Notes: a model not told the origin generated them from the letters alone. A DNA stretch of 64,000 nucleotides from Vitrella brassicaformis CCMP3155 (GCA_001179505.1 CDMY01000520.1:124001-188000); one strand, 5' to 3'. Positions 24,901-38,893 are shown, numbered from the stretch's first letter. Numbers and translations are program-made.

Positions 24901-27828
24901 AGTCAGCCACCGAGACAGCCCGATCCGCTGTGATTGATTCATGTCGCTTCCCTCCTCGCGTTGTGTTGGTTGATTCACAGGTTGACCGTCGCCACACTCT
25001 GCTGTAGGCGGGCTGTCAACTAGTCACTCCATGCATATTCGTGTGCTGTCCTTTGTCAGGGGGTCTGTGGCGGATCCTGCCGCTCCATTGCAAGGCCTCC
25101 AACCTCTCCCAGCTGTGCTGCCCAGGCACAAACAAGCCCGACACAGACGACGACGATGATGCAGACTCGCCACATCAACAGGGGCAGCAACAGCACCAAA
25201 CCCAGCGCGCCTTCTCAGAGTCAGGCAGTGCCTCCCGGTCTGCTATGCGACAGTCGCACTCCGACAACGTCAGCGAGAGGCGGCGGAAACGGAAGGACAG
25301 GTGGCTGCAGTACTTCATTTGTCCCCAACTATGGGTGGTGTGCCTCACATTCATCCACCCAAGTGAGCCAGGCACACAATCAAACAGACCAGACAGATGA
25401 AGAGGTCGCGTGCTCTTTTTGTGTCCTTGCCTGTCGTCCTTAGCCGTGACGCGTCAGCTGCTGGAGATCCTCCCCTGCCGCACCTTCCCGACCATCCGCT
25501 TGTCAGAGCCCCCCGGCGAACCCCTCGAGGGGCCTTATCCAACCATCCGCCGCTCATTGCTCGACCCCTCAATCCTCTGCTACACCGGCCAGCACCTCAC
25601 CTTCACCATCGTCTCCGTCGTGGGGCTGTGCGTGTGGTCCTTCGGCCCGGTCATCGCGGCACTGAGCATTCTGTGCTCGTACCAGCGGTCGGGGCGGCTC
25701 TACAAGCGGCAGACGCGGAAGAACCTGGGATTTCTCTACAACGGCTACCGTCGGTCCTTCTTCTACTGGGATGTCTGTTTTGCTTTGCGGCGGATTGCGG
25801 CTCTTGTCATAGCGCAGGCGGGTGCGTCTTTGGGTGACGAGATGATCCAGCTGGTGTGTTGGCAGCTCGTGGCTGCCTCGTCGCTCATCGTGCAGCTGTG
25901 GGTGAGGCCATTCGACAGCAGATCCTTCAACATACTCAATCGCATGGAGGCACAAGGTATGTAGGCGGCCGGGCCACACTGCCTGCATGGTCGGGTGCGT
26001 CAATGTGTTGGTCTGTCGATCGATTGAACTCAGGTTTGCTGATTTGGAACATCTCACTGTGGTGTCTGATGCTGCTGGCGTCGACAGCCGCCCATCCGAC
26101 TATGATGGCGTTGACAGCCGCCCACCCGACTGTGAGCCAGGAGTTTCAGGAGGTGCTGGGATACGTGCTGACGACCGTTGTGGTGCTGATCAACGCCTAT
26201 CACATCATCGCCCTCATTTGTCACACTGTACAGCATTCGCTCGATGTGCTGATGACGTCCATCCTGATTCTCGAGCACCTACCGGACAGTGCTCCCGGTG
26301 CCCGAGAGAAGAGGGACGGCATCATCATGGCGGCTATGCGTCGCATCGCCTTCACTGTGGGGGATTGTGAGGACCGCCGACGAGCAAGAGTCCCAACAGT
26401 GTGGCTCGACGCCGACGGCAGTGAGCTTACCATCATCCTTGACAGCAGCAAGGGCAAGGGCGGCGGCAAGGGGACGGCAGCCACGCCATCAGGCTCATCT
26501 GGCTCACGTCGACCAAGCAAGCCGCCACGCAGCCGCGCCCCTGTCGAGGGCAAGGTGGTGCTGCATGCGTCATCGCTGCCCCTCCCCGTGCCTATGACGA
26601 CGCAGAGCGCACCGCCTGCGCTGCTGGAGGTAGCACCTGGGGCTCATGACGGCAGCTTACGCAAGAAGAACACGGCCACCAGTTTGGACGACCTGTACTT
26701 CGACTCTTCTGCCACCGTGCAAGTGCAGCAGCTGCCCGTCTTTGCCCCCTGCCTCTTCCCGCCCTGCTCCGCCGACCACACGGCCGCAGCGACCACCCGG
26801 TCCCTCCCCCCTTCCGTCGAGGGCGACACTGGCACGTCACTCGGCCCCCATCTCCCCATAGCCGGGCAGCATCTCGGGTCGAGAGGCGACCTACCTGCTG
26901 CCATCTGGTCCGCGGCGACCGACAGCCTGCCACCAGACCAGGCACAGCGGATTCCCCAGGTGATCGCATCCACCCACTCGCTGCCCGCCATGGAGCACAG
27001 CCAGCGCACCACAGTGACCGATGCTGCCGAGCCGTCCTCGGTGGCACCGACCGAGCCGTCAGTCCGTTCTGCCAATCCGCTGAAGGAGGTGTGGAATCGC
27101 ATGTCAACAGCGGCGCTGACTCTAACTACACGGACAATGCGTGCGCGTCGTGTGGAGAGCGACCGGCGGAAGCGGTGGTGTTCTGAGGTCATGCGGCTGA
27201 CGAGTGAGTCGATGCAGGAGGTCATCGAGCAAGTGGGCATCCAGGCGGTGCCGAGTGATTTCGTCGAGTTCTTGTGGAGCCAGACCTTTGATGTGTACCG
27301 TCGGAGGAAGAGGACCATCAAGGATCCGACGTCAGGCAACGAACGGATCGTCCTCTTGCCGTCCTTGGAACTGAGGGTATGCACATGCACATACATATAC
27401 ATAAATGTACACATGGCGTCTCCGCATTTCGGTCATTTCTGTTGTGTTGCGCACATGTGCGCAGGTGGCCACAAGGTCGTCGTTGCGGAGGGGGTCTTCG
27501 TCATCCTTTGTGGACCTGATGAATGCGATTCAGGAAGAGGCCGTCACCGACGACACCGCAAAGACCGAAGGCATACCATTCACCGACTTCCAGGTAACCA
27601 AACAAGCACCAGCGACATCGTATCAGTCTCGCATCTCCTCTCTCTCTCCCTGTTCTCCCTGTCGCTCTGTGTCTGGCCATGTGGTACGTGCAGAGTAGCA
27701 TGGCGTTCGTTGTGGATCGGCTGATCAATGCTGGCCCCGGCTGGAAGGACGTGTATGCCGCCTTCAAGACGGCAAGGCAAGCGGACAAGGGTCACCAGGC
27801 GAACAACGGCCGTGTGTCGCCCCGATGA
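18949..27828 (+). CDS. Large receptor-like protein: signal peptide, unknown N-terminal domain, LRRs, EGF/TNFR(ephrin-receptor)-like Cys repeats, multi-pass (about 7 TM) region, cytoplasmic tail
   Basis: Signal-like RFSISLFMGVLPVVAAVSG. LRRs such as LSGPLPDAIVSLPELRGLYLDDTQLNGTLP and LQRLWDLDLSRNRLSGVIP. Cys-rich CRCIPGYEGHGRTCTKCPDGTYSN and EGHTGPMCGSCDKGW. TM block with CYTGQH..VGLCVWSFG..LGFLYNGYRRSFFYWD..LWVRPF. Last exon ends ...NGRVSPR* at 27828. Individual exon borders are approximate. Confidence 0.85.
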
Positions 27829-28249
27829 CTGAGTGGCTGCATGTGTGCATCCGTGGGTGTGCCTACATTCGTGACGTGCGCGGTATGCCTCTTCTGTGTT
27901 CATCTTTTTCTCGGCTTTTTGCCGTCCCGCTGTGGTGCGTACCAGTCAGCCAATTGTCTGCTGCTCGTACCTGTCGCACTGTGAGGCTTTGCCGCTCACA
28001 CGCGCTTCCGTAAGTCTGTCTGTCTCCCGTCAAGTGACTTCGATCGGCTCGAGTGTATTTAGAGCGATGTGACTTTATCTGCGCCCTGTTATGTTCTATT
28101 ATGTGGGTATCGTATTGGCGTAAGGAGCGTCGGTGTGCAGTTCATGAGTGGATCGATGGTCGCTGAGCCGACGTGCGCCTGTCTTAATGGCATTTAACTC
28201 GGTGTTCGGTGGGACAGACATTGTGTTCGATGATTCATCTTAGTTGGTG

Positions 28250-28625
28250 CTCTCGTCTCTACCCATGTGTCTGTAGTCAATGTCCCACTCTGTCCCGCCT
28301 TCCCCATTTCCCGCCATGCAATGCAGTGTTCCACCATCGTCACGTCGCATTCATCCAGTCCCACGTGTGTCATCCATCCGATCCATGCATGTACCCATGC
28401 ATATGACCGGCCAGTCGATAACACGAACAAGCACTGCGGACGGACGTCTGTCTAGAAGAAAAAAAAAACTCGAGCTCATGTGGGGGAAAGCAAAGTACTG
28501 ACTACCCTGTCTCCCTTACAGCTACGCTGCCACTATGGCTACACGTGTGAAAATAACATCACCCGATATGCATGTCACACATCCATGTGGCTGCCCCGCA
28601 GTGTCGGCAAGCTCTCGCCCGCCTG
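28250..28625 (-). repeat. Diverged copy of the S74-gene 3' flank segment
   Basis: For example cagctacgctgccactatggctacacgtgtgaaaataaca...cgcagtgtcggcaagctctcgcccgcc (about 28520-28623) matches 34960-35065 in the same orientation. Confidence 0.8.
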
Positions 28626-29171
28626 CACACAATCATTCACGCAGCAGCGTCCAGCGTCACGTACGAGACAACTGACAACTGACGAATCACGCGAGCCCTC
28701 CCATTCCGCGCACGTGTACCATACATCACATCACATCACAGACGTCATGACACATCCCTACACACGCAGCGTCAGTCACACAGTCACGCACGAATGCATT
28801 TGTATGCGCACGGCGAGCCGACCAGCCAGTCACTCTCATTTGGAGGGGACCGACTTGCCAGCCCCCCCAACACACACAAAAGATCACATGCACGCCTCTC
28901 TGTACGAATTGTTGCCATTTGCGGCCACACACACACATTCATGTATGAATCATGAAAGGCACCCTTGGCTGGCTAAGAGGGCCACATCGAGAAAGTGACT
29001 TAGCTGTAGAAGCTGACCACAACAGGAGACACTGACATCAGCACTGTCACGAGTAATCGTACACGTGCTCGGGAAATCACATCACACGGATTGTGGGCTC
29101 GTCCAAGTTTAAAAGCAAACTGCAGGCAACAACAGATACACACAGGCAGAAAACAGGTTGAGAACAGATAA

Positions 29172-30332
29172 TTAAGACAATGTTCGGCGTGTTAGTGAAG
29201 AATCTGTCTGTTGGAGAGCGCGTGCGTCCATGCATATCACACCTGCTCTGTAGGCGCATCCGTTGGCGGCAAACGGACCCCTGTGAGCGCATGTGTTGCT
29301 ACTACGTCTCCTGCACATACAAACACGAATCGTGCGAACGGCCAGGTCTCTTCAAGTTCACTTGACTAACCATGTCTCGGGAGTGTTGTTGTTGTGGCAC
29401 GAGACCTCCATCCACAAGCATCCTCTCCACCCGTACTTCTTGCACGCCTCATTTCCCGATTTATGCAAACGCGTCGGCCCAGACGGACCAGGCTTCAGGT
29501 CCGTCATGCACACATACTTGTGGAGGTTGAAAGGGGTGGACGGGGTCTTCCTCTTCATGCAGCCATACAGCTTCCGGTTGCACTTCCTGTTCCTTCTATC
29601 GCAACGTTGGTCGTCGCAACTGCATGGAAAGACCAAGAGCAGAAGAGAGTTCAACAAAGGAGATTGGCCTGCAGCATGCTGTCCTCTCATGTCTACTCAC
29701 TCGTTGGAGCAGCAATCGTTGTCGTATCTGCAGCGGTGTCCATATGGGGCCAGCGCTTTCTTCGGCCAGCACCAACCATTGACGCAGTTCTTAGAGTTGC
29801 AATCCCGGGTGCGACTGCATCTACTCCCAATTGGCCTCTGCTGCTCCGAAACAGCAGTTGTGTTGCCCTGAGGGCAAGCACACAAGGAACAGGGTCGACA
29901 ATAATTACCGAGACTCAACGCACTCGCATCTCATGTGTAGGTTTGTGTGAGAGCTCGGGTGCGCGTACATGGGAGGAAGCCTGCTCCTCCTCCATGCCGT
30001 CCTCATCAGCCTCGTCTCTGTAGGGACTGTCGGGATGCTCAGGATTCATCCAGTCCTCCCACACCTGCACCCAAACAGAAGAACAGCCATCTATGTGCAT
30101 GAGACTCAACACCCTGCGTCAGCAAGCTCCACTAGCCTACATCGTCGCCGTCTGCATCGTCGTCTTGTTCCGTGAAGCCGCCGAGGTCCTCCTCGAGCTC
30201 AACTGTACGAGGTGCGTCTCCAAGTTGAAACTCGGGAGACTCCGGGTCTGCGGCAGGCACGGGCGGGTCGGCATAAGGAGCGGCCAGACCCATCGTTACC
30301 AGGGCAGCGAACACGACAAGCAGACGAGTCAT
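29172..30332 (-). CDS. Secreted Cys-rich protein: signal peptide, acidic pro-region, two knottin/Dickkopf-like Cys motifs, C-terminal SRCR-like segment
   Basis: MTRLLVVFAALVTMGLAAP; acidic EEDLGGFTEQDDDADGDD and RDEADEDGMEEE; GSRCSRTRDCNSKNCVNGWC; GHRCRYDNDCCSNDCDDQRC; YVC...NEACKKYGWRGCLWMEVSC...TCAHRGPFAANGCAYRAGVIC. The last exon (29172-29310) is inferred; an unspliced alternative stops at 29358. Confidence 0.75.
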
Positions 30333-30391
30333 GATGCACACACAGCACACAGATCTGCGGCGGAGGGGGGAAGAGGAGGAGAGGGGGAGAA

Positions 30392-30457
30392 AGGGTTAGG
30401 CCGTTACGGCTCCGTTACCGCCCCAGGGTTAGGCCGTTACGGCTCCGTCACCGCCCC
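30392..30457. promoter_or_regulatory. 2 x 33-bp tandem repeat (agggttaggccgttacggctccgt(t/c)accgcccc) carrying CCGTTA/TAACGG motifs, about 60-125 bp upstream of the 30332 ATG
   Basis: Direct repeat seen in the sequence (1 mismatch). Regulatory role is inferred from position and from recurrence of AACGG upstream of the other secreted genes. Confidence 0.6.
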
Positions 30458-30764
30458 TCAGGGGTGCGAGCTGCAGCAGCGGTTTCAGGGATGAAATTTC
30501 CCTCCTCCGTCGGGCTGGCGGGACTCGCTCGCGTTCCCGAAACGAAATGCAAAGCCCCCATGCATGCAAAGCCCCCAAGCTCGCATGCAAGCCCCCGCAA
30601 GGGAACCGAAGGGAATTGCTAGCTTGGCCCCAATTACGGACAAACAAACAAGAACACTTTGTTTCGTAAGAGCGTGCCACGCTCGTGAAACTCGCGAGTC
30701 CCGAACGAACCCCCGGCGGGTGTGTTGCGTTGAAATGAAAGGGGGACGACCCCCGGCGGGTAGA

Positions 30765-31078
30765 GAGGATTGGGATAGGCACTTGGAGTGTCTGTCTGAC
30801 TGTCTGTATGTCTGTGTATGTTTAGCTTATAGTGCCAGCTTACCGCCGACGCACCTGATCCCTCGTTTGTGGCAGAACACGAGACGGGCATAGAGACGTT
30901 CATGAGTCCAGACGGTAAGTCTTCGCGCGGCGTATTGGATGCAGGCTGATGAGCTCGGCACCACGAGCTCTAATGTCTTGTATGTTTCTGTGTGTCGGTG
31001 TGTCGGGCAGGGTCGATGGGCTGCGGAAAGGACATGATGGTGGCCAGAGTCCAGGCCGAAAATGCGATGGTTGTGTGA
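30765..31078 (+). pseudogene. Truncated third copy of the S74/ICA gene: intron 1 tail, exon 2, intron 2 and start of exon 3; exon 1 and the entire ICA domain are missing
   Basis: Exon 30833-30914 (82 nt, CQLTADAPDPSFVAEHETGIETFMSPD) has the same length as and resembles exon 2 of the 35381-36613 gene. Exon from 31011 (GSMGCGKDMMVARVQAE) jumps at about 31061 straight into the 3' flank that follows the intact gene at about 38208. Confidence 0.85.
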
Positions 31079-31830
31079 TTTTTGCAATCCTCTCGACTGG
31101 CAAGCACTGAGTCTGTCCGCATACATGGGGTCCATGTGGGCGGGCAAGTCGTGTGGGCGTACTGTGGCTTACTTGCGCTACGTGTGCTGCCTTGGTTGTC
31201 TGTGCATTGTGTCACTTTACTGTGGCTGACCCATCCACTCACTCGTAGAACGGTGATTTTTGGCTGGACAGACGGCCGTCCACATTATTTGTTGGCGCTG
31301 GCGGGCGAGAGCTTGCCGACACTGCGGCGCAGCCTCATGGATGTGTGACATGCGTGCCGGCTCGTCTTGATTGTCACACGTGTGGCCATCGTGGCAGCGT
31401 AGCTGTAATGGAGACGAGAGGCGGGCAGCTTGGAGTTCTTTTTTGTCTGGACAGGTTCGTCCACACCGTTGGGTGCTGCTCTGGTGTCTGCGTGTTGGGT
31501 GCCGTGTGTGTGTCTGTTGACTGGCTGGTCAGTCAGTGGCACCTCCGAAACAGGGAGGTGCTGACGTACCTGCGCAGATCGGCAGACACACACAGTGCCA
31601 CGCGCCTGAGGCATTGGATGGATGAATGATGTGTGAGGGAGATGCGACGTCACGATGGGACATTGCATTGCATTGCGGGTTGGGAAAGAGACACGTGGGG
31701 ATGTGGGGATGAGAGCACTGAAACCATCAGAAGAAACCAGCAATCATCGGCAAAGGCACTCTCGCCCTCCCCTCTGATGAACAATCCATCACACGCTGAA
31801 TGCAGACAGACTGCCCACCAGGAATACCGT
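31062..31830 (+). repeat. Copy of the S74-gene 3' flank; inverted relative to 34540-35310, direct relative to 38208-38750
   Basis: Long near-identical stretches such as atgcgatggttgtgtgatttttgcaatc...gggcaagtcgtgtgggcgtactgtggcttacttgcgctacgtgtgctgccttggttgtc. Confidence 0.9.
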
Positions 31831-32793
31831 CCACTCCACATCATTTGTCTGCATGAATGTCTCCCTTCGTCTCGGCGACATTCACAGAGAGAGACAGAGA
31901 GACAGAGAGAGAGAGCGCATGGAACTTATGTATTATGTGTTGTATCGTGTACGTGGCTGTCGAATGAGTGAATATATGGGTTGACGTGTGAGCGATCAGT
32001 TCGCCAGTTTTGAGTCATTTGAGTGTATCCGCTCGAGCTCGACGAATCATTGCAGGTGGTGCTGTGATATCATACCCATGTGACCGTCTGACAGTGTGTG
32101 TTCCGCCCTGTCCCTTTTTCCCGCAGTGTTAGTATCCACGAATGTACAGCCACATGGATCAGATCAGGCCAGGCGTGTCCGTATTTCTCTCCGTCGACCG
32201 ACCCACCCATCCACCCATGCCTTTCCTCACAGGCATACGCCAGAAAATAACACGTGCTGCAGAGTAGTCATCGATGGATGGTGACAGAGCAGTCATCGAT
32301 GGATGGTGACAATGGAATGGCAGCTTGGGTGCGACGAACGGCGTCTGTCGGCTCAGCGTCCCCTTTTTCGGGCGCCGCACAGACAAACGCTGACACACCA
32401 TCCACAGCCGCCTGACTGACTGATTGACTGACCGTGCCGTGTCACAAAACAAACAAGGAAAAGTACCGGCCTGACAGACCGAAGAATGCACATACGTACA
32501 CACACGCACATACGTACATACGTAGACACATGCATACAGACAGACATGCATACATACACGCGTATGTACACACGTACATACGTACATACAGACATGCATG
32601 CACACGTACACACATGCATACATACATGTAGCACGAGGGACACAGCGAGACAAATAACTCTACCGAATTAAGTGCCGTGCGGGGATGCTGATCGGCAGGT
32701 AGCCAGGTAGATGGCACACGACCATAGAAAGTAACTCACGGGCTGACGCATCACGGAGGTCAGTCAGTCGATAGAAAGATCGGCACAGCTTGA

Positions 32794-34291
32794 TCAGCAC
32801 AATTTAATGGCCGACACCCAGCCGTTAAAAGGGTCGAACCTGGTAGCCACTGACTGGTTTACATTGCTCTTATGACCTGTAGGCGAGAGAGAGAGAGACA
32901 GACGGATCCATGAACGCACACAGAAAGAAGGAACGAAGAGAGAGACAGACACAGAGGTGCAATCAAACTGAGGCTCGTGTGTGTACGTATGGCTCGTTCC
33001 GTAGCTAACAGATGGACGGGCGCACCTTGCAAGTAGCAGGTGGTGCCGCCGTTTTTGTAGGTGTAGAAGCGGCACTTCTTCTTGTCGCGACACTTCTGCC
33101 TGCACTCCGCCTCAGTGTTGTATTGCTTGGTATCAATGACCGCGCCAAAAATATAGGTGTTGTTTTTGCGGAGAAACGGGCACTTTCTCCGGTTCACATC
33201 GCCCTCCGGATCAACACTCAGCTCACCAGCTGCATGCAGACCCAAGACAGAAATTATGTAGGTGCACACTCCCAATCTGTACATACAGTGGCCTTACGAA
33301 TGCTTGACTTAGCGGCCGTGATGATATCCATGAAGAAGGCGCACTCCTCGCGTGCCTGCTCAGCCGCGGGGCTGCGGAGGGAGCCTTCATCTGCACCACA
33401 CACACGAGCGATGAGAACCAGGAACATCGTCACGTGTATGCACGCTGGCCGGGATGCCCCACCTACCAGTCTTGAGGTCCCTGCAGGTCGTGATTCTCTG
33501 CTGGGCAGCTGAAGCCTCCTCAGGGTGTTTTTCGGCCCAAGAATGGTCACAGGCGGACCATTTGCATTCGTTTTTCCAGCAGTTCCAATCGAACAGAGGG
33601 CACTCCCAGCAGCACTTCTCATCTGGCTTCTCTGCAGCAGCCAGAAAGGAACACACAAGACACAAGACAGACATTCGAGCTAGCGAATGACCTTGTGTGC
33701 ATTGCTGCACCACCCACCAGTCGTGGTGGGCGGCTCCTCGGCTGGTTCCTCGTCGGCGTCGTCCTGTCTGGTGCTCTCGTCATCGGTGCACGCGGAGAAC
33801 GAACACTCATACTTCCAGCACTGTCATCAGTGTCATCAGCAGCCACACAAGACACACACCGTCTCCTCATTGCATGGTCGCACCCACCCCACCCACCTGC
33901 CAATCGAAGAGCCTGCAGTCCCAGCAGCACTTATCCTTGGGTGGTTTCGCTGCAGCACAACAGCATAAGAAACGACCGACCAGGACAGCACACACGCACA
34001 CACACACACACACACACCAGACAAACAGGCGGTGACAAGTCAGGTCTGGCTGCAGATGGTCCTACGAGTGGTGGTTTCGGTCGTGTCACCGTCTCCATTG
34101 TCACCGTCTCCATTGTCACCGTCTCCATTGTCACCGTCAGTGCCGTCAGTGCCGTCAGTGCCGTCAGTGCCGTCGCCTGGCTCGGGGTCGCCATTCTGGA
34201 GCCGACGTGCAGGCACGCCGGCACGAGGCACTTCCTGTGCCGCCGCCAAGGCGAGCAGGCCGATAAGGGCAAGGGCGAAGAGGGTCCTCAT
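32794..34291 (-). CDS. Secreted protein with GTD/GDN repeats, two Cys/Trp-rich repeats and a C-terminal PAN/apple domain
   Basis: MRTLFALALIGLLALAAAQE signal; KCCWDCRLFDWQCWKYECSFSAC and KCCWECPLFDWNCWKNECKWSAC; PAN-like CPFLRKNNTYIFGAVI...EAECRQKCRDKKKCRFYTYKNGGTTCYLQ...WVSAIKLC*. Seven exons with GT-AG borders keep the frame. Confidence 0.85.
34085..34174 (-). repeat. Coding minisatellites: (GACGGCACT)x4 = (DGT)4 and (GACAATGGAGACGGT)x3 = (DNGDG)3
   Basis: Direct reading within exon 1 of the PAN gene. Confidence 0.9.
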
Positions 34292-34369
34292 CGTGGTGAC
34301 GATCTGGCGGGGAGTTCGAAAGGATGAACAGAAAACTTGAACTTCACGAAGGAGAGATCTGTACGGAGA

Positions 34370-34447
34370 CGGTAACGAAGACGTTACGGAAACTTCACGG
34401 AGCCGCAACGGCTCTGCCGTTGCCGCTTCGGCGAGCTTGGATCGCGC
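34370..34447 (-). promoter_or_regulatory. Promoter element GCGCGATCCAAGCTCGCCG plus clustered AACGG/GTAACG motifs upstream of the PAN gene
   Basis: The 19-mer at 34429-34447 (- strand) is identical to 59710-59728 (+ strand). Both lie about 135-155 bp upstream of related signal-peptide ATGs. Confidence 0.7.
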
Positions 34448-35380
34448 ATTTCCGTGACCTCTCCCTTTATTTCTACACGCACGCGTGACTCGTCCAGCCA
34501 TGTGTATGTCATCCGAGCCGACGGGATATTCACGCAGGCAATGGACGGGTATTCGTGGTGGGCAGTCTGTCATACATTCAGTGTGTGATGGATTGTTCAT
34601 CGGAGGGGAGGACATTGTTGCTTCCTTCTGATGGTTTCAGTGCTCTCATCCCCATGTGTCTGTGCGTCCCGCCCCGGCAATGCAATGGCCCACTGTGTCA
34701 CACGTCGCATCTCCCTCACGCGCATCATCCATCCATCCAATGCATCAGGCACGTGGCACTGTGTGTGTCTGCCGATCTGCGCAGGTACCTCAGCACCTCC
34801 CTGTTTCGGAGGACCGCTGACTGACCAGCCAGTCAACACACACACACACACACACACACGGCACCCAACACGCAGACACCAGGGTGGCACCCAACAGTGT
34901 GGACAGACATCTGTCCAGACCAAAAAGAACTCCAAGCAGCGCGCCTTTCGTCTCCATTACAGCTACGCTCCCACGATGGCTACACGTGAAAATAACAACA
35001 TGAGCCGGCACGCACGTCACACATCCATTAGGCTGCGCCGCAGTGTCGGCAAGCTCTCGCCCGCCAGCGCCAACAAATAATGTGGACGGCCATCTGTCCA
35101 GCCAAAAATCACAGTTGCACAAACAAAGTGGATGGGTCAGACACAGTAAAGTGACACAGTGCACGACAGACAACCAAGGCAGCACACGTAGCGCAAGTAA
35201 GCCACAGTACGCCCACACGACTTGCCCGCCCACATCGAGCCCATGTATGGGACAGGTTCAGTGCTTGCCAGTCGAGATGACTGCAAAAATCACACAACCA
35301 TCGCATCCCGCATGCACACATTGATGGACCACATACACCCCACCCATCACACACCATGGATGGAGGCATCCACCGACTAC

Positions 35381-36613
35381 TTAGCGGAGGGCTCGCTGGC
35401 CCTTCAGGGCAGCGATCTCGGCTTCCAGCGCTTCCACTTTCGCCTGCAGCTGCTGGGCGACTATCATTGTCTGCCACACACAAGCGAACACACAACACAC
35501 AGCAAAGGAGGGACACGGATACACACATACATGTGAAGCCTCGATTGACACGTGTGTGCTATTCACCTTGTAGAGGAGAGCGTATTGGTTCACATGGATG
35601 CTCTCTTCGGGCTCCGGGGTGCCCACGAGGTGTGCTCGATCAGTCATCACCGTGTCAGGGAAGATCGCCTGTGTGGATGGGACGCCAAAAAGACAGACGC
35701 ATCAACGGACAGAGCCGAGTGAAGAGGAACGGTGGTCTCGGGCTGCTCCATCGCACCCACCTTAAGCTCCTCGCCAATCACGCCCGTGAGTGGGGTCTCC
35801 GCCTCCGCCTGAAGCCCACGTCCGACCTCCTTACGCTGTCAGAGCGACAACACACAAAGGGAGAAGTCATTCCACCCACCCACCCACACCCTCCATCGGT
35901 ATCGTGGCGTGGGTGCCTCCCTACCTTGTATGTGTGCATCTTGATGAACCTGAACCGCTCGTAGGTGTTGCCTCGCTCCTGCTCGGGCATGATGTCCACT
36001 TGGGACAGACTGCTGCGGGTAACCATGCCGTCCCGGTCGAAGACTCTGTCGGTGAAGACTCTCCCCACCATCATGCCCGTTCCGCAGCCAACCGACCCTG
36101 CACCGACAGACAGACAGACAGACAGACACACAGACATTAGAGCTCATGGTGTCGAGCTCATATCCGCCTGCATCCACTACGGCGTGCAAAGACCTACCGT
36201 ATTGATGCATAGGCCTTCCGTTGGTCTCATCTGCCGCCACAAGCCCTGGATCAGGTTTGCCTCGAGCGGTAAGCTGGCACTGTAAGCCAAACATGCACAC
36301 AAACATACAGACAATCAGACAGACACGTGGTCGAATGCCCATCCCCATCCTATCTATGTACCTCGTCAAGCGCAATTTCCTGAACAAGACACCGCAAGCC
36401 ACGTCAATATGTCAGGATGGGCGTATTGGTTGTTTGGCCGCCTGCCCTTACCGTCGGCTTGGCGTCCCTTAGGAGCGGTTCATCGATTTGATCGGGTGGC
36501 CTGCAGGCCATCCACATCTTCCCCCCGCCGGCCGCCGGCGGTGGATACGCTGATGCTGGCGTTGCTGTCACTGCTGCCAGAGCAACAAGGAAGACGTTGA
36601 GGAGGCAAGCCAT
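35381..36613 (-). CDS. Secreted protein with C-terminal ICA/Peptidase S74-like chaperone domain and coiled coil (paralogue a, 227 aa)
   Basis: Exons 36613-36452, 36279-36198, 36097-35925, 35835-35761, 35668-35567, 35470-35381 total 684 nt, in frame. MACLLNVFLVALAAVTATPASA signal; VTRSSLSQVDIMPEQERGNTYERFRFIKMHTYKRK...TGVIGEELKAIFPDTV...SIHVNQYALLYKTMIVAQQLQAKVEALEAEIAALKGQRALR*. The gene model is firm; the domain call rests on motif recall. Confidence 0.85.
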
Positions 36614-36879
36614 GATACACACACGGAGATCTGAGACGCGCGTCCAGGTAGGCGCGGTTCACGCCAGGCCGAGGGAGGGGGAAAAGAGGAGGGGGACCGG
36701 GGCGGCTATCGGCGAGTGGGGATCGCGTTTCTGTTGCGGCTTAGCTCGCATCGGTACTTTTCAGTTACGGATCCCCCGACCGGTAACGGCTACGGAGAAG
36801 GGAGAAGATCCGGTGATCCCAGCCCTGTCGCCTCCTCTTCACCCTTCCGAACCGCAGGTCTGTGTGCTGTGTGTGCATC

Positions 36880-38129
36880 ATGACTCGTCTGCTCGTCGTG
36901 TTCGCTGCCCTGGCAGCAGCAATGCCAGCATCAGCGAAGATGTGGATGGCCTGCAATCCAATGAATCAAATTGATGAACCGCTCCTGAGGGACTCTACGC
37001 CGACGGTAAGGGTCAGGCAGGCGGCCAAACAACCAATACGCCCAACCAACCCAGGACGTGGTTTGCGGTGTCTTGTTCAGGAAATGTTGCTTCACGCGGT
37101 AGCTGGGATGCGGATGGCCATTTGGACCACGTGTCTGTCTGATTTGTGTCTGTGTATCTTTCCCTTGCAGTGTGACCTTAGTGGTACGGGAAGAGGCGAA
37201 CCTGAACCAGTGTTGGTGGCTGCAAATGAGGACACCGGAGAGGTTGAGAATGGATCCGGTAGGTCTCTGCACGCCGTAGTGGATACAGGCGGATATGAGC
37301 TGACACCACGAGCTCTAATGTCTTTTTGTCTGGCTGTCTTCTGTGTCTGTGTGTCGGTGCAGGGGCGATGGGCTGCGGACAGAATAACATGCTGGCCAGC
37401 GTCGCGGCCGAGGAGATCCTCGACGGGACCGGCAGGGTCACCCGCAGCAGTCTGGCCCAAGTGGACATTATGCCCGAGCAGGAGCTGAGCAACACCTATG
37501 AGCGCTTCAGGTTCATCAAGATGCACACATACAAGGTAGGGAGGTACCGACGGCATGCATAGCGAGCAGGCCAAGGCAGCGATGGAGGGGGTGGGTGGGA
37601 TGGAATGATCTCCCTCGGTGTGTGCTGTCACACTGACAGCGTAAGGTGGCCGGACGTGGGCTTCAAGGGGGGGCGGAGACCCCAATCACGGGCGTCATTG
37701 GCGAGGAGCTTAAGGTGGGTGCGATGGAGCAGCCCGAGACCACCGTTCCTCTTCACTCGGCTCTGTCCGTTGATGTGTCTGATGTGTCTGTCTTTTGGGC
37801 GTCCCATCCACACAGGCGATCTTCCCTGACACGGTGATAACTAATCGAGCACACCTCGTGGGCACCCCAGAGCCCGAGGAGAGCATCCATGTGAACCAAT
37901 ACGCTCTCCTCTACAAGGTGGATAGCACACACGCGTCAATCAAGGCTTCACATGTAATGTGTGTATCCGCGTCCCTCCTTTGCTGTGTGTTGTGTGTTCG
38001 CTTGTGTGTACGTGGCAGACAATGATAGTCGCCCAGCAGCTGCAGACGCGCAGCGACAACCAGGCCAAGGCCATCGAAGCGCTGGAAGCCGAGATCGCGG
38101 CCCTCAAGGCTCAGCGCGCCCTTCGCTAA
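36880..38129 (+). CDS. Secreted protein with C-terminal ICA/Peptidase S74-like chaperone domain and coiled coil (paralogue b, 224 aa)
   Basis: Exons 36880-37005, 37171-37258, 37363-37535, 37640-37714, 37816-37917, 38019-38129 total 675 nt, in frame. MTRLLVVFAALAAAMPASA signal; VTRSSLAQVDIMPEQELSNTYERFRFIKMHTYKRK...TGVIGEELKAIFPDTV...HVNQYALLYKTMIVAQQL...IEALEAEIAALKAQRALR*. Confidence 0.85.
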
Positions 38130-38893
38130 GTAGTCGGTAGATCCATCCATCCATCCATGGTGTGTGATGGGTGGGGTGTATGTGGTCCATCAATGTGTGC
38201 ATGCGGGATGCGATGGTTGTGTGATTTTTGCAATCATCTCGACTGGCAAGCACTGAGTCTGCCCCATACATGGGGTCGATATGGGCGGGCAAGTCGTGTG
38301 GGCGTACTGTGGCTTACTTGCGCTACGTGTGCTGCCTTGGTTGTCTGTGCATTGTGTCACTTTACTGTGGCTGACTCATCCACTTTATTTGTGCAACTGT
38401 GATTTTTGGCTGGACAGATGGCCGTCCACACCGTTGGGTGCCGTGTGTGTGTGTGTGTGTTGACTGGCTGGTCAGTCAGCGGTCCTCCGAAACAGGGAGG
38501 TGCTGAGGTACCTGCGCAGATCGGCAGACACACACAGTGCCACGTGCCTGATGCATTGGATGGATGGATGATGTGTGTGAGGGAGATGCGACGTGTGACA
38601 CAGTGGGCCATTGCATTGCCGGGGCGGGACGCACAGACACATGGGGATGAGAGCACTGAAACCATCAGAAGGAAGCAACAATGTCCTCCCCTCCGATGAA
38701 CAATCCATCACACACTGAATGTTGACAGACTGCCCACCACGAATACCCGTCCATTGCCTGCGTGTAGGACACTGATCCCGTCGAACGCCGTTGAAAATCT
38801 GCATGCAGACGGGGGCGCCCCCATGAATTGGGGTGATCTCTTCGTTCCTTTCCCCGTTCCTCGCTTAACCCATGGCTCAGTGAGGCGACAAGC

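What the first reader, a model, noticed from the sequence alone, without database searches (positions are those of the whole stretch)
29172..38764. Payload swapping: an unrelated Cys-rich gene sits inside an S74-type cassette (same leader, same 3' flank)
Seen: the knottin/SRCR-like gene (ATG 30332, - strand) has the same 5' leader and signal start as S74 paralogue b. Compare ctcctcttc.cc.tccg..ccgcag.tctgtgtgctgtgtgtgcatcATGACTCGTCTGCT.GTCGTGTTCGCTGCCCTGG at about 30300-30375 (-) with about 36833-36913 (+); both give MTRLLVVFAAL. Downstream of it (28250-28625) lies a diverged copy of the S74 3' flank in the matching orientation. The mature proteins are otherwise unrelated. Inference: the coding payload was exchanged between a conserved promoter/signal exon and a conserved 3' flank. 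This would be a recombination-driven way to create new co-regulated secreted proteins.
Basis: partly seen in the sequence, partly recalled or inferred. Interest (0 to 1): 0.8.

Follow-up and report, generated by a model that had tools for sequence, protein, structure and literature searches.

The report
Two unrelated secreted genes share ends
In the alga Vitrella brassicaformis, a cysteine-rich secreted protein gene and its one paralogue share their first 11 codons, and a block of DNA after the gene, with an unrelated family of small secreted S74-like proteins; this is an old chimeric gene architecture kept similar by local gene conversion, not a recent swap at this locus.

Summary
The Cys-rich gene (P0001 = CEM20039.1, 260 aa, minus strand, ATG 30332) shares an 86-nt leader with S74-like gene b. 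The leader covers about 50 nt upstream plus the first 11 codons (MTRLLVVFAAL). Identity is 92% over 86 nt and 97% over 62 nt. BLAST finds this leader only three times in the 72.7-Mb genome. A colinear, same-strand, diverged copy of the S74 3' flank lies at 28206-28628. The mature proteins are unrelated.

- The gene's one paralogue, on another contig (P0002, C840, dS above 1), has the same signal start (MARLLVVFAAL).
- That paralogue also has the same 3' module, joined at the same point. The chimeric architecture therefore arose once, long ago.
- At this locus, only short patches at the two ends are nearly identical to the neighbouring S74 copies.
- Upstream of -30, gene b resembles the Cys gene more than its own paralogue b'. 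That points to recent local gene conversion.
- Only two payload types carry this leader, and the homology junction lies inside exon 1, not at an intron.
- Apart from about 50 nt before the ATG, no upstream (promoter) sequence is shared, and co-regulation is untested.

This is a clean but small case of the "export-exon" type. The scan's notes record a similar shared-leader case elsewhere in this genome; I did not check it.

The parts
30299..30382 (-). Shared leader patch of the Cys-rich gene. It holds a pyrimidine tract, CAG/ATCT, a 25-nt 5'UTR, the ATG at 30332 and codons 1-11 (MTRLLVVFAAL).
   Evidence: 92% over 86 nt and 97% over 62 nt to b at 36828-36913. Only three BLAST copies in the genome.
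29109..30332 (-). Cys-rich secreted gene (P0001 = CEM20039.1, 260 aa, 18 Cys). Six exons: 30332-30141, 30064-29969, 29867-29701, 29619-29362, 29310-29243, 29119-29109.
   Evidence: My exon model equals the public protein, which is also on record from an MMETSP transcript. The paralogue P0002 keeps all the cysteines.
28629..29108 (-). Proximal 3' region specific to the Cys gene.
   Evidence: Unique in the genome at BLAST level.
28431..28628 (-). Module A of the S74 3' flank, downstream of the Cys gene.
   Evidence: nhmmer E 1.8e-29, profile positions 308-482. The core 28509-28626 is 86-87% identical to a and c. By genome-wide BLAST, module A occurs only in a, c and here.
28206..28390 (-). Strongly diverged remnant of module B of the flank.
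   Evidence: nhmmer E 3.5e-8, profile positions 625-770, colinear with module A.
30383..30760 (.). Intergenic stretch between the Cys gene and remnant c that matched none of the other copies compared. It holds a 33-bp tandem repeat (30392-30457) with TAACGG motifs. No S74 exon 1 is present.
30761..31886 (+). Copy c, a dead a-type S74 remnant lying head-to-head with the Cys gene. It runs from intron 1 to the start of exon 3 (30761-31059), then jumps into the 3' flank (31062-31886). Exon 1 and the S74-like domain exons are missing.
34501..36624 (-). S74-like gene a with its full 3' flank (34501-35380, holding modules A and B). The protein starts MACLLNVFLVAL.
36828..38772 (+). S74-like gene b (P0003, 230 aa). 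Leader 36828-36913, ATG 36880. Seven exons, including an 18-nt mini-exon at 37081-37098. Stop at 38129. The flank 38130-38772 lacks module A.

Best explanation
Two unrelated families of secreted proteins in Vitrella brassicaformis have homologous gene ends. One family is the a/b clade of small S74/ICA-like proteins. The other is a two-member Cys-rich family (P0001 here, P0002 on contig C840). The shared 5' end is the 5'UTR plus the first 11 codons of the signal peptide. The shared 3' end is a module (A, then a diverged B) that starts a few hundred bases past the stop codon. I infer that one old illegitimate recombination joined a Cys-rich coding body, with its own proximal 3'UTR, to the ends of a b-type S74 gene. 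The direction is probably S74 to Cys. The junctions were in frame after codon 11 and at flank profile position about 308. The chimeric gene then duplicated. The copy that stayed inside the S74 cluster (this window) has since exchanged short patches with its S74 neighbours by gene conversion. That is why its leader (86 nt) and the module A core (about 120 nt) are 86-97% identical to S74 copies, while the rest of its flank, and both ends of the C840 copy, are strongly diverged. In functional terms, both families begin with the same 5'UTR, start context and signal-peptide n/h-region, and they may share a 3' element. Shown: the homologies, their specificity, the shared junctions, the relative ages, and that transcript-derived ORFs carrying the shared signal start are on record for both genes. 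Inferred: the direction, the mechanism and any regulatory consequence.
For: Specificity of the ends:
- The leader has three BLAST copies in the genome.
- The 11-codon pattern has four hits and none with the control.
- The 25-nt 5'UTR is exact only in b, b', a' and the Cys gene.
- Module A is found by BLAST only in a, c and the Cys gene.

Age of the architecture:
- P0002 starts MARLLVVFAAL and its exon 1 ends GAT|gtaggc, like P0001.
- Its 3' region matches the flank profile from position 310 (E 6e-8). The next-best hit in 96 kb of unrelated loci is E 0.002.
- The window gene's match starts at profile position 308, and both paralogues carry the same Cys-specific sequence just before the junction.
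- dS between the Cys paralogues is 1.1-1.3 and dN/dS is about 0.3. dS between S74 a and b is 0.09-0.33.

Recent patchy exchange:
- The leader is 97% identical and module A 86-87%, but module B next to it is detectable only by HMM.
- Between -52 and -30, b is closer to the Cys gene than to its own 91%-identical paralogue b'.

Direction:
- All four S74 genes share the 5'UTR.
- b's lack of module A looks like a deletion between two roughly 38-nt direct repeats, so the clade originally had it.
- An outgroup gene with the same knottin-like motif (C1052) has a different signal peptide and no flank.

Expression: the P0001 and b ORFs, both with the shared start, are on record from MMETSP transcripts.
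Against: - Direction is not proven. The exact 11-residue start is older in the Cys family (dS above 1) than any measurable S74 a/b divergence, and a-type S74 genes start differently (M[AG][CR]LL[NS][VL]FLVAL).
- The leader is too short for a tree. Only two sites distinguish b from the Cys gene within the 62-nt tract, and they point in opposite directions.
- Strong purifying selection on the leader, rather than conversion, could explain part of the high identity. b and b' are 100% identical over 69 nt there.
- Module B also follows other secreted genes (on C601 and C277) and occurs on C269. Part of the 3' similarity may therefore be a low-copy 3'-end repeat, not a relic of the same event.
- No transcript ends were available, so I do not know whether module A is in the mRNA.
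Confidence: 0.55

Rival explanations
1. Recent in-situ payload replacement. A third head-to-head a/b-type S74 pair existed here, made of remnant c plus a lost b-type copy. The body of the b-type copy was replaced by the Cys-rich coding region between its leader and its flank. The C840 gene is a later copy of that product.
For: - The geometry fits. The Cys gene lies head-to-head with an a-type remnant (c), just as b does with a, and b' with a' on C277. The ATG spacing is about 175-270 bp.
- The leader is b-type, without the extra codon of a-types.
Against: - The Cys paralogues differ by dS above 1, whereas c is still 79-94% identical to a and b even in intron and flank. The pair geometry is therefore much younger than the chimeric gene.
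- Module B next to the Cys gene is far more diverged than in c.
- The 378 bp between the leader and c share nothing with the a/b or a'/b' intergenic regions.
- No S74 exon remnants lie inside the Cys gene.
Confidence: 0.13
2. Reverse direction at the 5' end. MxRLLVVFAAL is native to the Cys-rich family, and the b-type S74 genes acquired codons 1-11 from the neighbouring Cys gene by a short conversion. The shared 3' module is a low-copy 3'-end repeat unconnected with that event.
For: - The start is conserved in both old Cys paralogues at the protein level, although about half of its synonymous sites differ.
- a' and b are about 92% identical in the 5'UTR but only about 70% in codons 1-11, then similar again. 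b therefore looks like a mosaic.
- Module B follows other secreted genes as well.
Against: - a-type starts are still recognisably homologous (about 73% nt identity, 8 of 11 residues).
- Module A is restricted to S74 a and c and the two Cys genes, with one shared junction. It is hard to see that as an independent repeat.
- The Cys gene's 5'UTR is the S74 type, unlike that of C840.
Confidence: 0.2
3. No real relationship. The similar signal peptides arose by convergence or chance, the flank is a dispersed transposable element, or the junction is an assembly chimera.
For: - Signal peptides are compositionally simple.
- The flank contains GT microsatellites and palindromic motifs.
Against: - The genome-wide E-value for the leader is 1.3e-27.
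- The pattern search gives four hits against none for the control.
- The similarity extends into the 5'UTR.
- Module A has only three BLAST copies, and every flank copy whose neighbouring gene I could identify lies on that gene's strand.
- The same ORF is on record from an independent MMETSP transcript.
Confidence: 0.03

Closest known systems
'Export exon' / secretory-cassette gene families, such as anuran skin antimicrobial-peptide genes (PMC13128954) and pea-aphid cassette effector families (PMC7495047, abstract as listed)
   Same: A highly conserved signal-peptide coding region is shared by clustered genes whose mature products differ. The signal part is more conserved than the rest. Recombination is proposed as the origin.
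   Different: - Here the two mature proteins are unrelated families rather than hypervariable versions of one precursor.
- The junction is inside exon 1 (after codon 11), not at an intron.
- A 3' module is shared as well.
- Only two payload types exist.
- PMC13128954 notes that the exon-shuffling step has not been demonstrated in frogs.
Gene-conversion cassette systems with conserved flanking homology (trypanosome VSG expression sites, Neisseria pilE/pilS); this comparison rests on my own knowledge
   Same: Conserved blocks on both sides of a variable coding body could serve as homology arms. Patchy conversion between copies is seen.
   Different: There is no evidence for silent donor arrays, an expression site or programmed switching. 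The patches seen here convert the ends, not the payload.
Concerted evolution of palindromic or inverted gene pairs by gene conversion; this comparison rests on my own knowledge
   Same: a and b form an inverted pair whose outer flank arms are 99% identical while the coding parts are about 84% identical. The Cys leader and the b leader are an inverted repeat 6.5 kb apart.
   Different: Here conversion acts between otherwise non-homologous genes, through tracts as short as 60-120 nt.

Membership tests
Peptidase S74 / intramolecular chaperone (ICA) domain, for genes a and b | Match to Pfam PF13884 above the gathering score | tested here: not met
   P0003 scores 13.8 bits against a cut-off of 22, E 0.076. 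Exon-by-exon and six-frame scans found nothing in the window. The UniProt name 'Peptidase S74 domain-containing' is the source's automatic label.
Peptidase S74 / intramolecular chaperone (ICA) domain, for genes a and b | Similarity to a solved ICA domain | tested here: inconclusive
   The best PDB hit is the MYRF ICA region, 7dc3_A, at E 0.0089 over residues 122-218. The AlphaFold model was unusable, with pLDDT 37.5.
Peptidase S74 / intramolecular chaperone (ICA) domain, for genes a and b | Catalytic Ser-Lys dyad and self-cleavage | not tested
   An earlier scan note (s1-212003) says the lysine is missing. I did not check this.
Export-exon / secretory-cassette gene families | The same signal-peptide coding sequence on genes with different mature proteins | tested here: met
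Export-exon / secretory-cassette gene families | The signal peptide is on its own exon and the junction is at an intron | tested here: not met
   Homology ends after codon 11, inside exon 1. Exon 1 has 64 codons in P0001 and 42 in b.
Export-exon / secretory-cassette gene families | Many different payloads behind one leader | tested here: not met
   Only S74-like and Cys-rich payloads carry it genome-wide.
Transposable element or MITE, as an explanation of the 3' flank | Many dispersed copies with no fixed relation to genes | tested here: not met
   Module A has 3 BLAST copies plus 1 HMM copy. Module B has about 9 copies; those whose neighbouring gene I could identify lie downstream of it on its strand.
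Transposable element or MITE, as an explanation of the 3' flank | Terminal inverted repeats and target-site duplications | tested here: inconclusive
   Module A is bounded by two roughly 38-nt direct repeats that contain a TGGACAG/CTGTCCA palindrome. b has one hybrid copy. This fits a deletion between repeats. No TIR/TSD pair was identified.
Somatomedin-B (SMB) or knottin-type domain, for the Cys-rich payload | Significant match to a curated Cys-rich domain model | tested here: not met
   The full-length proteins give no Pfam hit at E up to 1. Exon 3 alone gives only sub-threshold hits to DUF7107, Dickkopf_N and conotoxin I2. PDB hits have E of 0.27 or worse. 'SMB domain-containing' is the source's automatic name.

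The most novel reading that the evidence does not exclude
The shared ends act as homology arms of a working recombination cassette. In Vitrella's clusters of head-to-head secreted genes, coding bodies, and not just end patches, would be moved between slots that share a leader and a 3' module. That would repeatedly create new secreted proteins with the same 5'UTR, signal start and 3' element. The unchecked scan note of another shared-leader cluster in this genome (s1-233248) would be a second instance.
Probability: 0.1. Interest if true: 0.75.

Novelty: new variant of a known kind. Interest (0 to 1): 0.42.

Why it matters
Signal-peptide sharing between different secreted products is usually explained by the 'export exon' idea. 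A 2026 paper notes that the shuffling step itself has not been demonstrated in frog AMP genes (PMC13128954). Here both junctions of a chimeric gene can be pinned down to within a few bases and are shared by two old paralogues. The two payloads are clearly unrelated. Continuing short-tract conversion between non-homologous neighbours is also visible. Together these give a concrete, datable example of how a new secreted protein can be built on an existing gene's ends, in an alveolate alga whose secreted proteins are almost unstudied. The scale is small (two payloads), and no regulatory or biological consequence has been shown.

Tried and rejected
- Spliced models were searched exon by exon, by reference. 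I left out the joined-protein step. Full-length proteins were used only after database tools returned them (P0001-P0007).
- Exon-wise Pfam and six-frame PF13884 scans did not detect the S74 domain in the window.
- AlphaFold models of P0003 (5 sequences) and P0001 (2 sequences) were unusable, with pLDDT 37.5 and 43.2. No fold search was run.
- The look-up of encoding contigs returned nothing for P0001 or P0003, so no transcript UTRs were available.
- Rfam on 27.5-39.5 kb gave only sub-threshold microRNA hits on an AC/GT microsatellite.
- Literature searches for Vitrella with S74, or with signal peptide and gene conversion, gave nothing.
- A 5'UTR pattern hit on C302 (2 mismatches) is not a signal-peptide gene.
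- I read the C601 gene upstream of a flank copy by eye as S74-like. Neither BLAST nor Pfam supports that, so I make no such claim.
- I considered and dropped the idea that a small inversion of c's own leader created the chimera. It needs an extra deletion, and the C840 paralogue contradicts it.
- An inversion of 30383-36827 between the two inverted leaders would swap the head-to-head partners. This remains an untested idea.
Full report
**Context**

The window is C520:124001-188000 of a 72.7-Mb, 1064-contig eukaryotic genome. Database records of the encoded proteins identify it as Vitrella brassicaformis CCMP3155. Genes here have short GT-AG introns. I searched spliced models exon by exon, by reference, and left out the joined step. 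Full-length proteins were used only once the database tools returned them.

**The observation**

- The inverted match 30299-30360 / 36852-36913 is 97% over 62 nt. It extends to 92% over 86 nt, 30299-30382 against 36828-36913 (E 1.7e-28; alignment).
- The tract covers a pyrimidine tract, CAG, a 25-nt 5'UTR, the ATG, and codons 1-11 (MTRLLVVFAAL). It ends sharply after GCCCTGG.
- Genome-wide, the 96-nt leader has three BLAST copies: b, the Cys gene, and b' on contig C277.
- A degenerate pattern for the 11 codons has four hits and none in the reversed control.
- The 25-nt 5'UTR is exact only in b, b', a' and the Cys gene. A 2-mismatch hit on C302 is not a secreted gene.
- A profile built from the three S74 flanks hits 28628-28431 (E 1.8e-29) and 28390-28206 (E 3.5e-8). 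These hits are colinear and on the gene's strand (alignment).

**The genes**

- *Cys gene.* My six-exon model equals P0001 = CEM20039.1, 260 aa. That sequence is also on record from an MMETSP transcript. The chimeric exon 1 is therefore transcribed, and the junction is not an assembly error.
- *Gene b.* It equals the MMETSP ORF P0003, 230 aa and seven exons. The NCBI model starts at an internal Met and misses the signal peptide.
- *Relationship.* The mature parts of P0001 and P0003 show no similarity.
- *S74 label.* Support is weak: PF13884 gives 13.8 bits against a cut-off of 22, and the MYRF ICA structure gives E 0.0089. I use "S74-like" as a label only.
- *Cys-rich payload.* It has 18 cysteines. 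No curated domain matches the full-length protein, and exon 3 alone gives only sub-threshold hits. Its exon 4 has no relative other than one paralogue among 1.84 billion representative proteins.

**Cluster anatomy**

- a (minus strand, 34501-36624) and b (plus strand, 36828-38772) lie head-to-head.
- A second pair of this kind, b'/a', sits on C277.
- Copy c (30761-31886, plus strand) is a dead a-type fragment. It has no exon 1, and its exon 3 is fused to the 3' flank. It lies head-to-head with the Cys gene.
- The flank has three parts: an S74-specific proximal part (profile positions 1-300), module A (about 300-506) and module B (507-800).
- Module A is bounded by two roughly 38-nt direct repeats. 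b has one hybrid repeat and no module A, which looks like a deletion between the repeats.
- By BLAST, module A exists only in a, c and the Cys gene.
- Module B also occurs on C601, C269 and twice on C277. On C601 and C277 it lies behind other signal-peptide genes, on their strand; I found no clear upstream gene on C269.

**The key new fact: the paralogue**

The Cys gene has one paralogue, P0002 = CEM35033.1 on contig C840. It is 44% identical overall and keeps every cysteine.

- Its exon 1 starts MARLLVVFAAL and ends GAT|gtaggc, like the window gene.
- Its 3' region matches the flank profile from position 310 to 739 on the gene's strand (E 6e-8). The next-best hit in 96 kb of unrelated Vitrella loci is E 0.002.
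- The window gene's match starts at position 308. Both paralogues carry the same Cys-specific bases (TGATTGTGTGCA) just before that point.
- Both junctions are therefore shared, which points to a single origin before the paralogues split.
- That split is old. dS is 1.1-1.3 with dN/dS about 0.3, whereas dS between S74 a and b is 0.09-0.33.
- In the 11 leader codons, the C840 copy differs from the window copy at about half of the synonymous sites but at only one residue. The peptide start has therefore been under selection throughout.
- An outgroup gene with the same knottin-like motif (C1052) has a different signal peptide and no flank.

**Evidence for recent local exchange**

- The window Cys gene is 97% identical to b in the leader and 86-87% identical to a and c in the module A core. 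Module B right next to it is so diverged that only the HMM finds it.
- A recent whole-cassette replacement would have left the entire flank similar, as it is in copy c.
- Between -52 and -30, b matches the Cys gene much better than it matches its own 91%-identical paralogue b'. The exchange therefore post-dates the b/b' duplication and is local.
- Upstream of about -50 nothing is shared. b and b', and a and a', are also not alignable there, apart from short TAACGG-type motifs. A promoter is thus not part of the shared unit.

**Direction**

All four S74 genes share the 5'UTR. The clade originally had module A. The outgroup Cys-motif gene lacks both ends. These points favour S74 to Cys. Against that, the exact 11-residue start is demonstrably old only in the Cys family. 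a-type S74 genes start M[AG][CR]LL[NS][VL]FLVAL with an extra codon, and b looks mosaic when compared with a'. I hold the reverse direction for the 5' end at about 0.2.

**Verdict**

The finding is real and specific. It is best read as an old chimeric gene architecture with two payloads and shared junctions, kept partly homogenised by short-tract conversion inside the cluster. It is not a fresh payload swap or a general cassette machine. The closest described pattern is the "export exon" pattern (PMC13128954; PMC7495047). This case differs in four ways: the junction is inside an exon, a 3' module is shared too, the payloads are truly unrelated, and there are only two of them. The scan's notes mention a similar shared-leader cluster elsewhere in this genome (s1-233248). 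I did not check it.

Noticed in passing
window 32800-34300 (-); L015 6297-6542 (-) = C277: A secreted gene starting MRTLFALALIGLLALAAAQE, with PAN-like Cys exons, lies between inverted copies of the S74 flank (31062-31886 and 34501-35306). C277 has a gene with a similar start (MKTLWLLALGMLALAAAQE) between two module B copies.
   Followed up: partly
window 34574-34853 vs 38443-38722: The outer flank arms of the a/b inverted pair are 99% identical over 280 nt, while the coding parts are about 84% identical. This suggests recent conversion or strong constraint on module B.
   Followed up: no
window 37081-37098 (+) and 36880: Gene b has an 18-nt mini-exon (EMLLHA), present in the MMETSP ORF P0003. 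The NCBI model CEM20043.1 starts at an internal Met and so lacks the signal peptide.
   Followed up: yes
window 30392-30457: A 33-bp tandem repeat carrying GTAACGG (Myb-site-like) motifs lies just upstream of the Cys gene's leader. Similar CCGTAACG motifs occur upstream of b, b', a', the C840 paralogue and the MRTLF gene. CAG/ATCT precedes the 5'UTR in a, the Cys gene and the MRTLF gene.
   Followed up: no
window 34888-34925, 35071-35108, 38403-38442, 28425-28462: A roughly 38-nt motif with a TGGACAG...CTGTCCA palindrome flanks module A as a direct repeat. b has a single hybrid copy and lacks module A, which is the signature of a deletion between repeats.
   Followed up: partly
window 26030-27735 vs L018 6986-8448 (C277): The neighbouring gene beyond the Cys gene's flank has a 68-87% similar counterpart next to a' on C277. 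The two clusters are therefore parts of a larger rearranged segmental duplication.
   Followed up: no
window 32470-32640: An AC/GT-rich 8-bp-period microsatellite gives sub-threshold Rfam microRNA hits (mir-297, 51.7 bits against 90). These are spurious.
   Followed up: yes
L016 3695-4667 (+) = C601: A signal-peptide gene (MTAVALSLRLSLLIAV...) lies about 720 nt upstream of a flank copy (profile positions 75-210 and 495-798). Its C-terminus looks ICA-like by eye, but BLAST and Pfam do not support that.
   Followed up: partly
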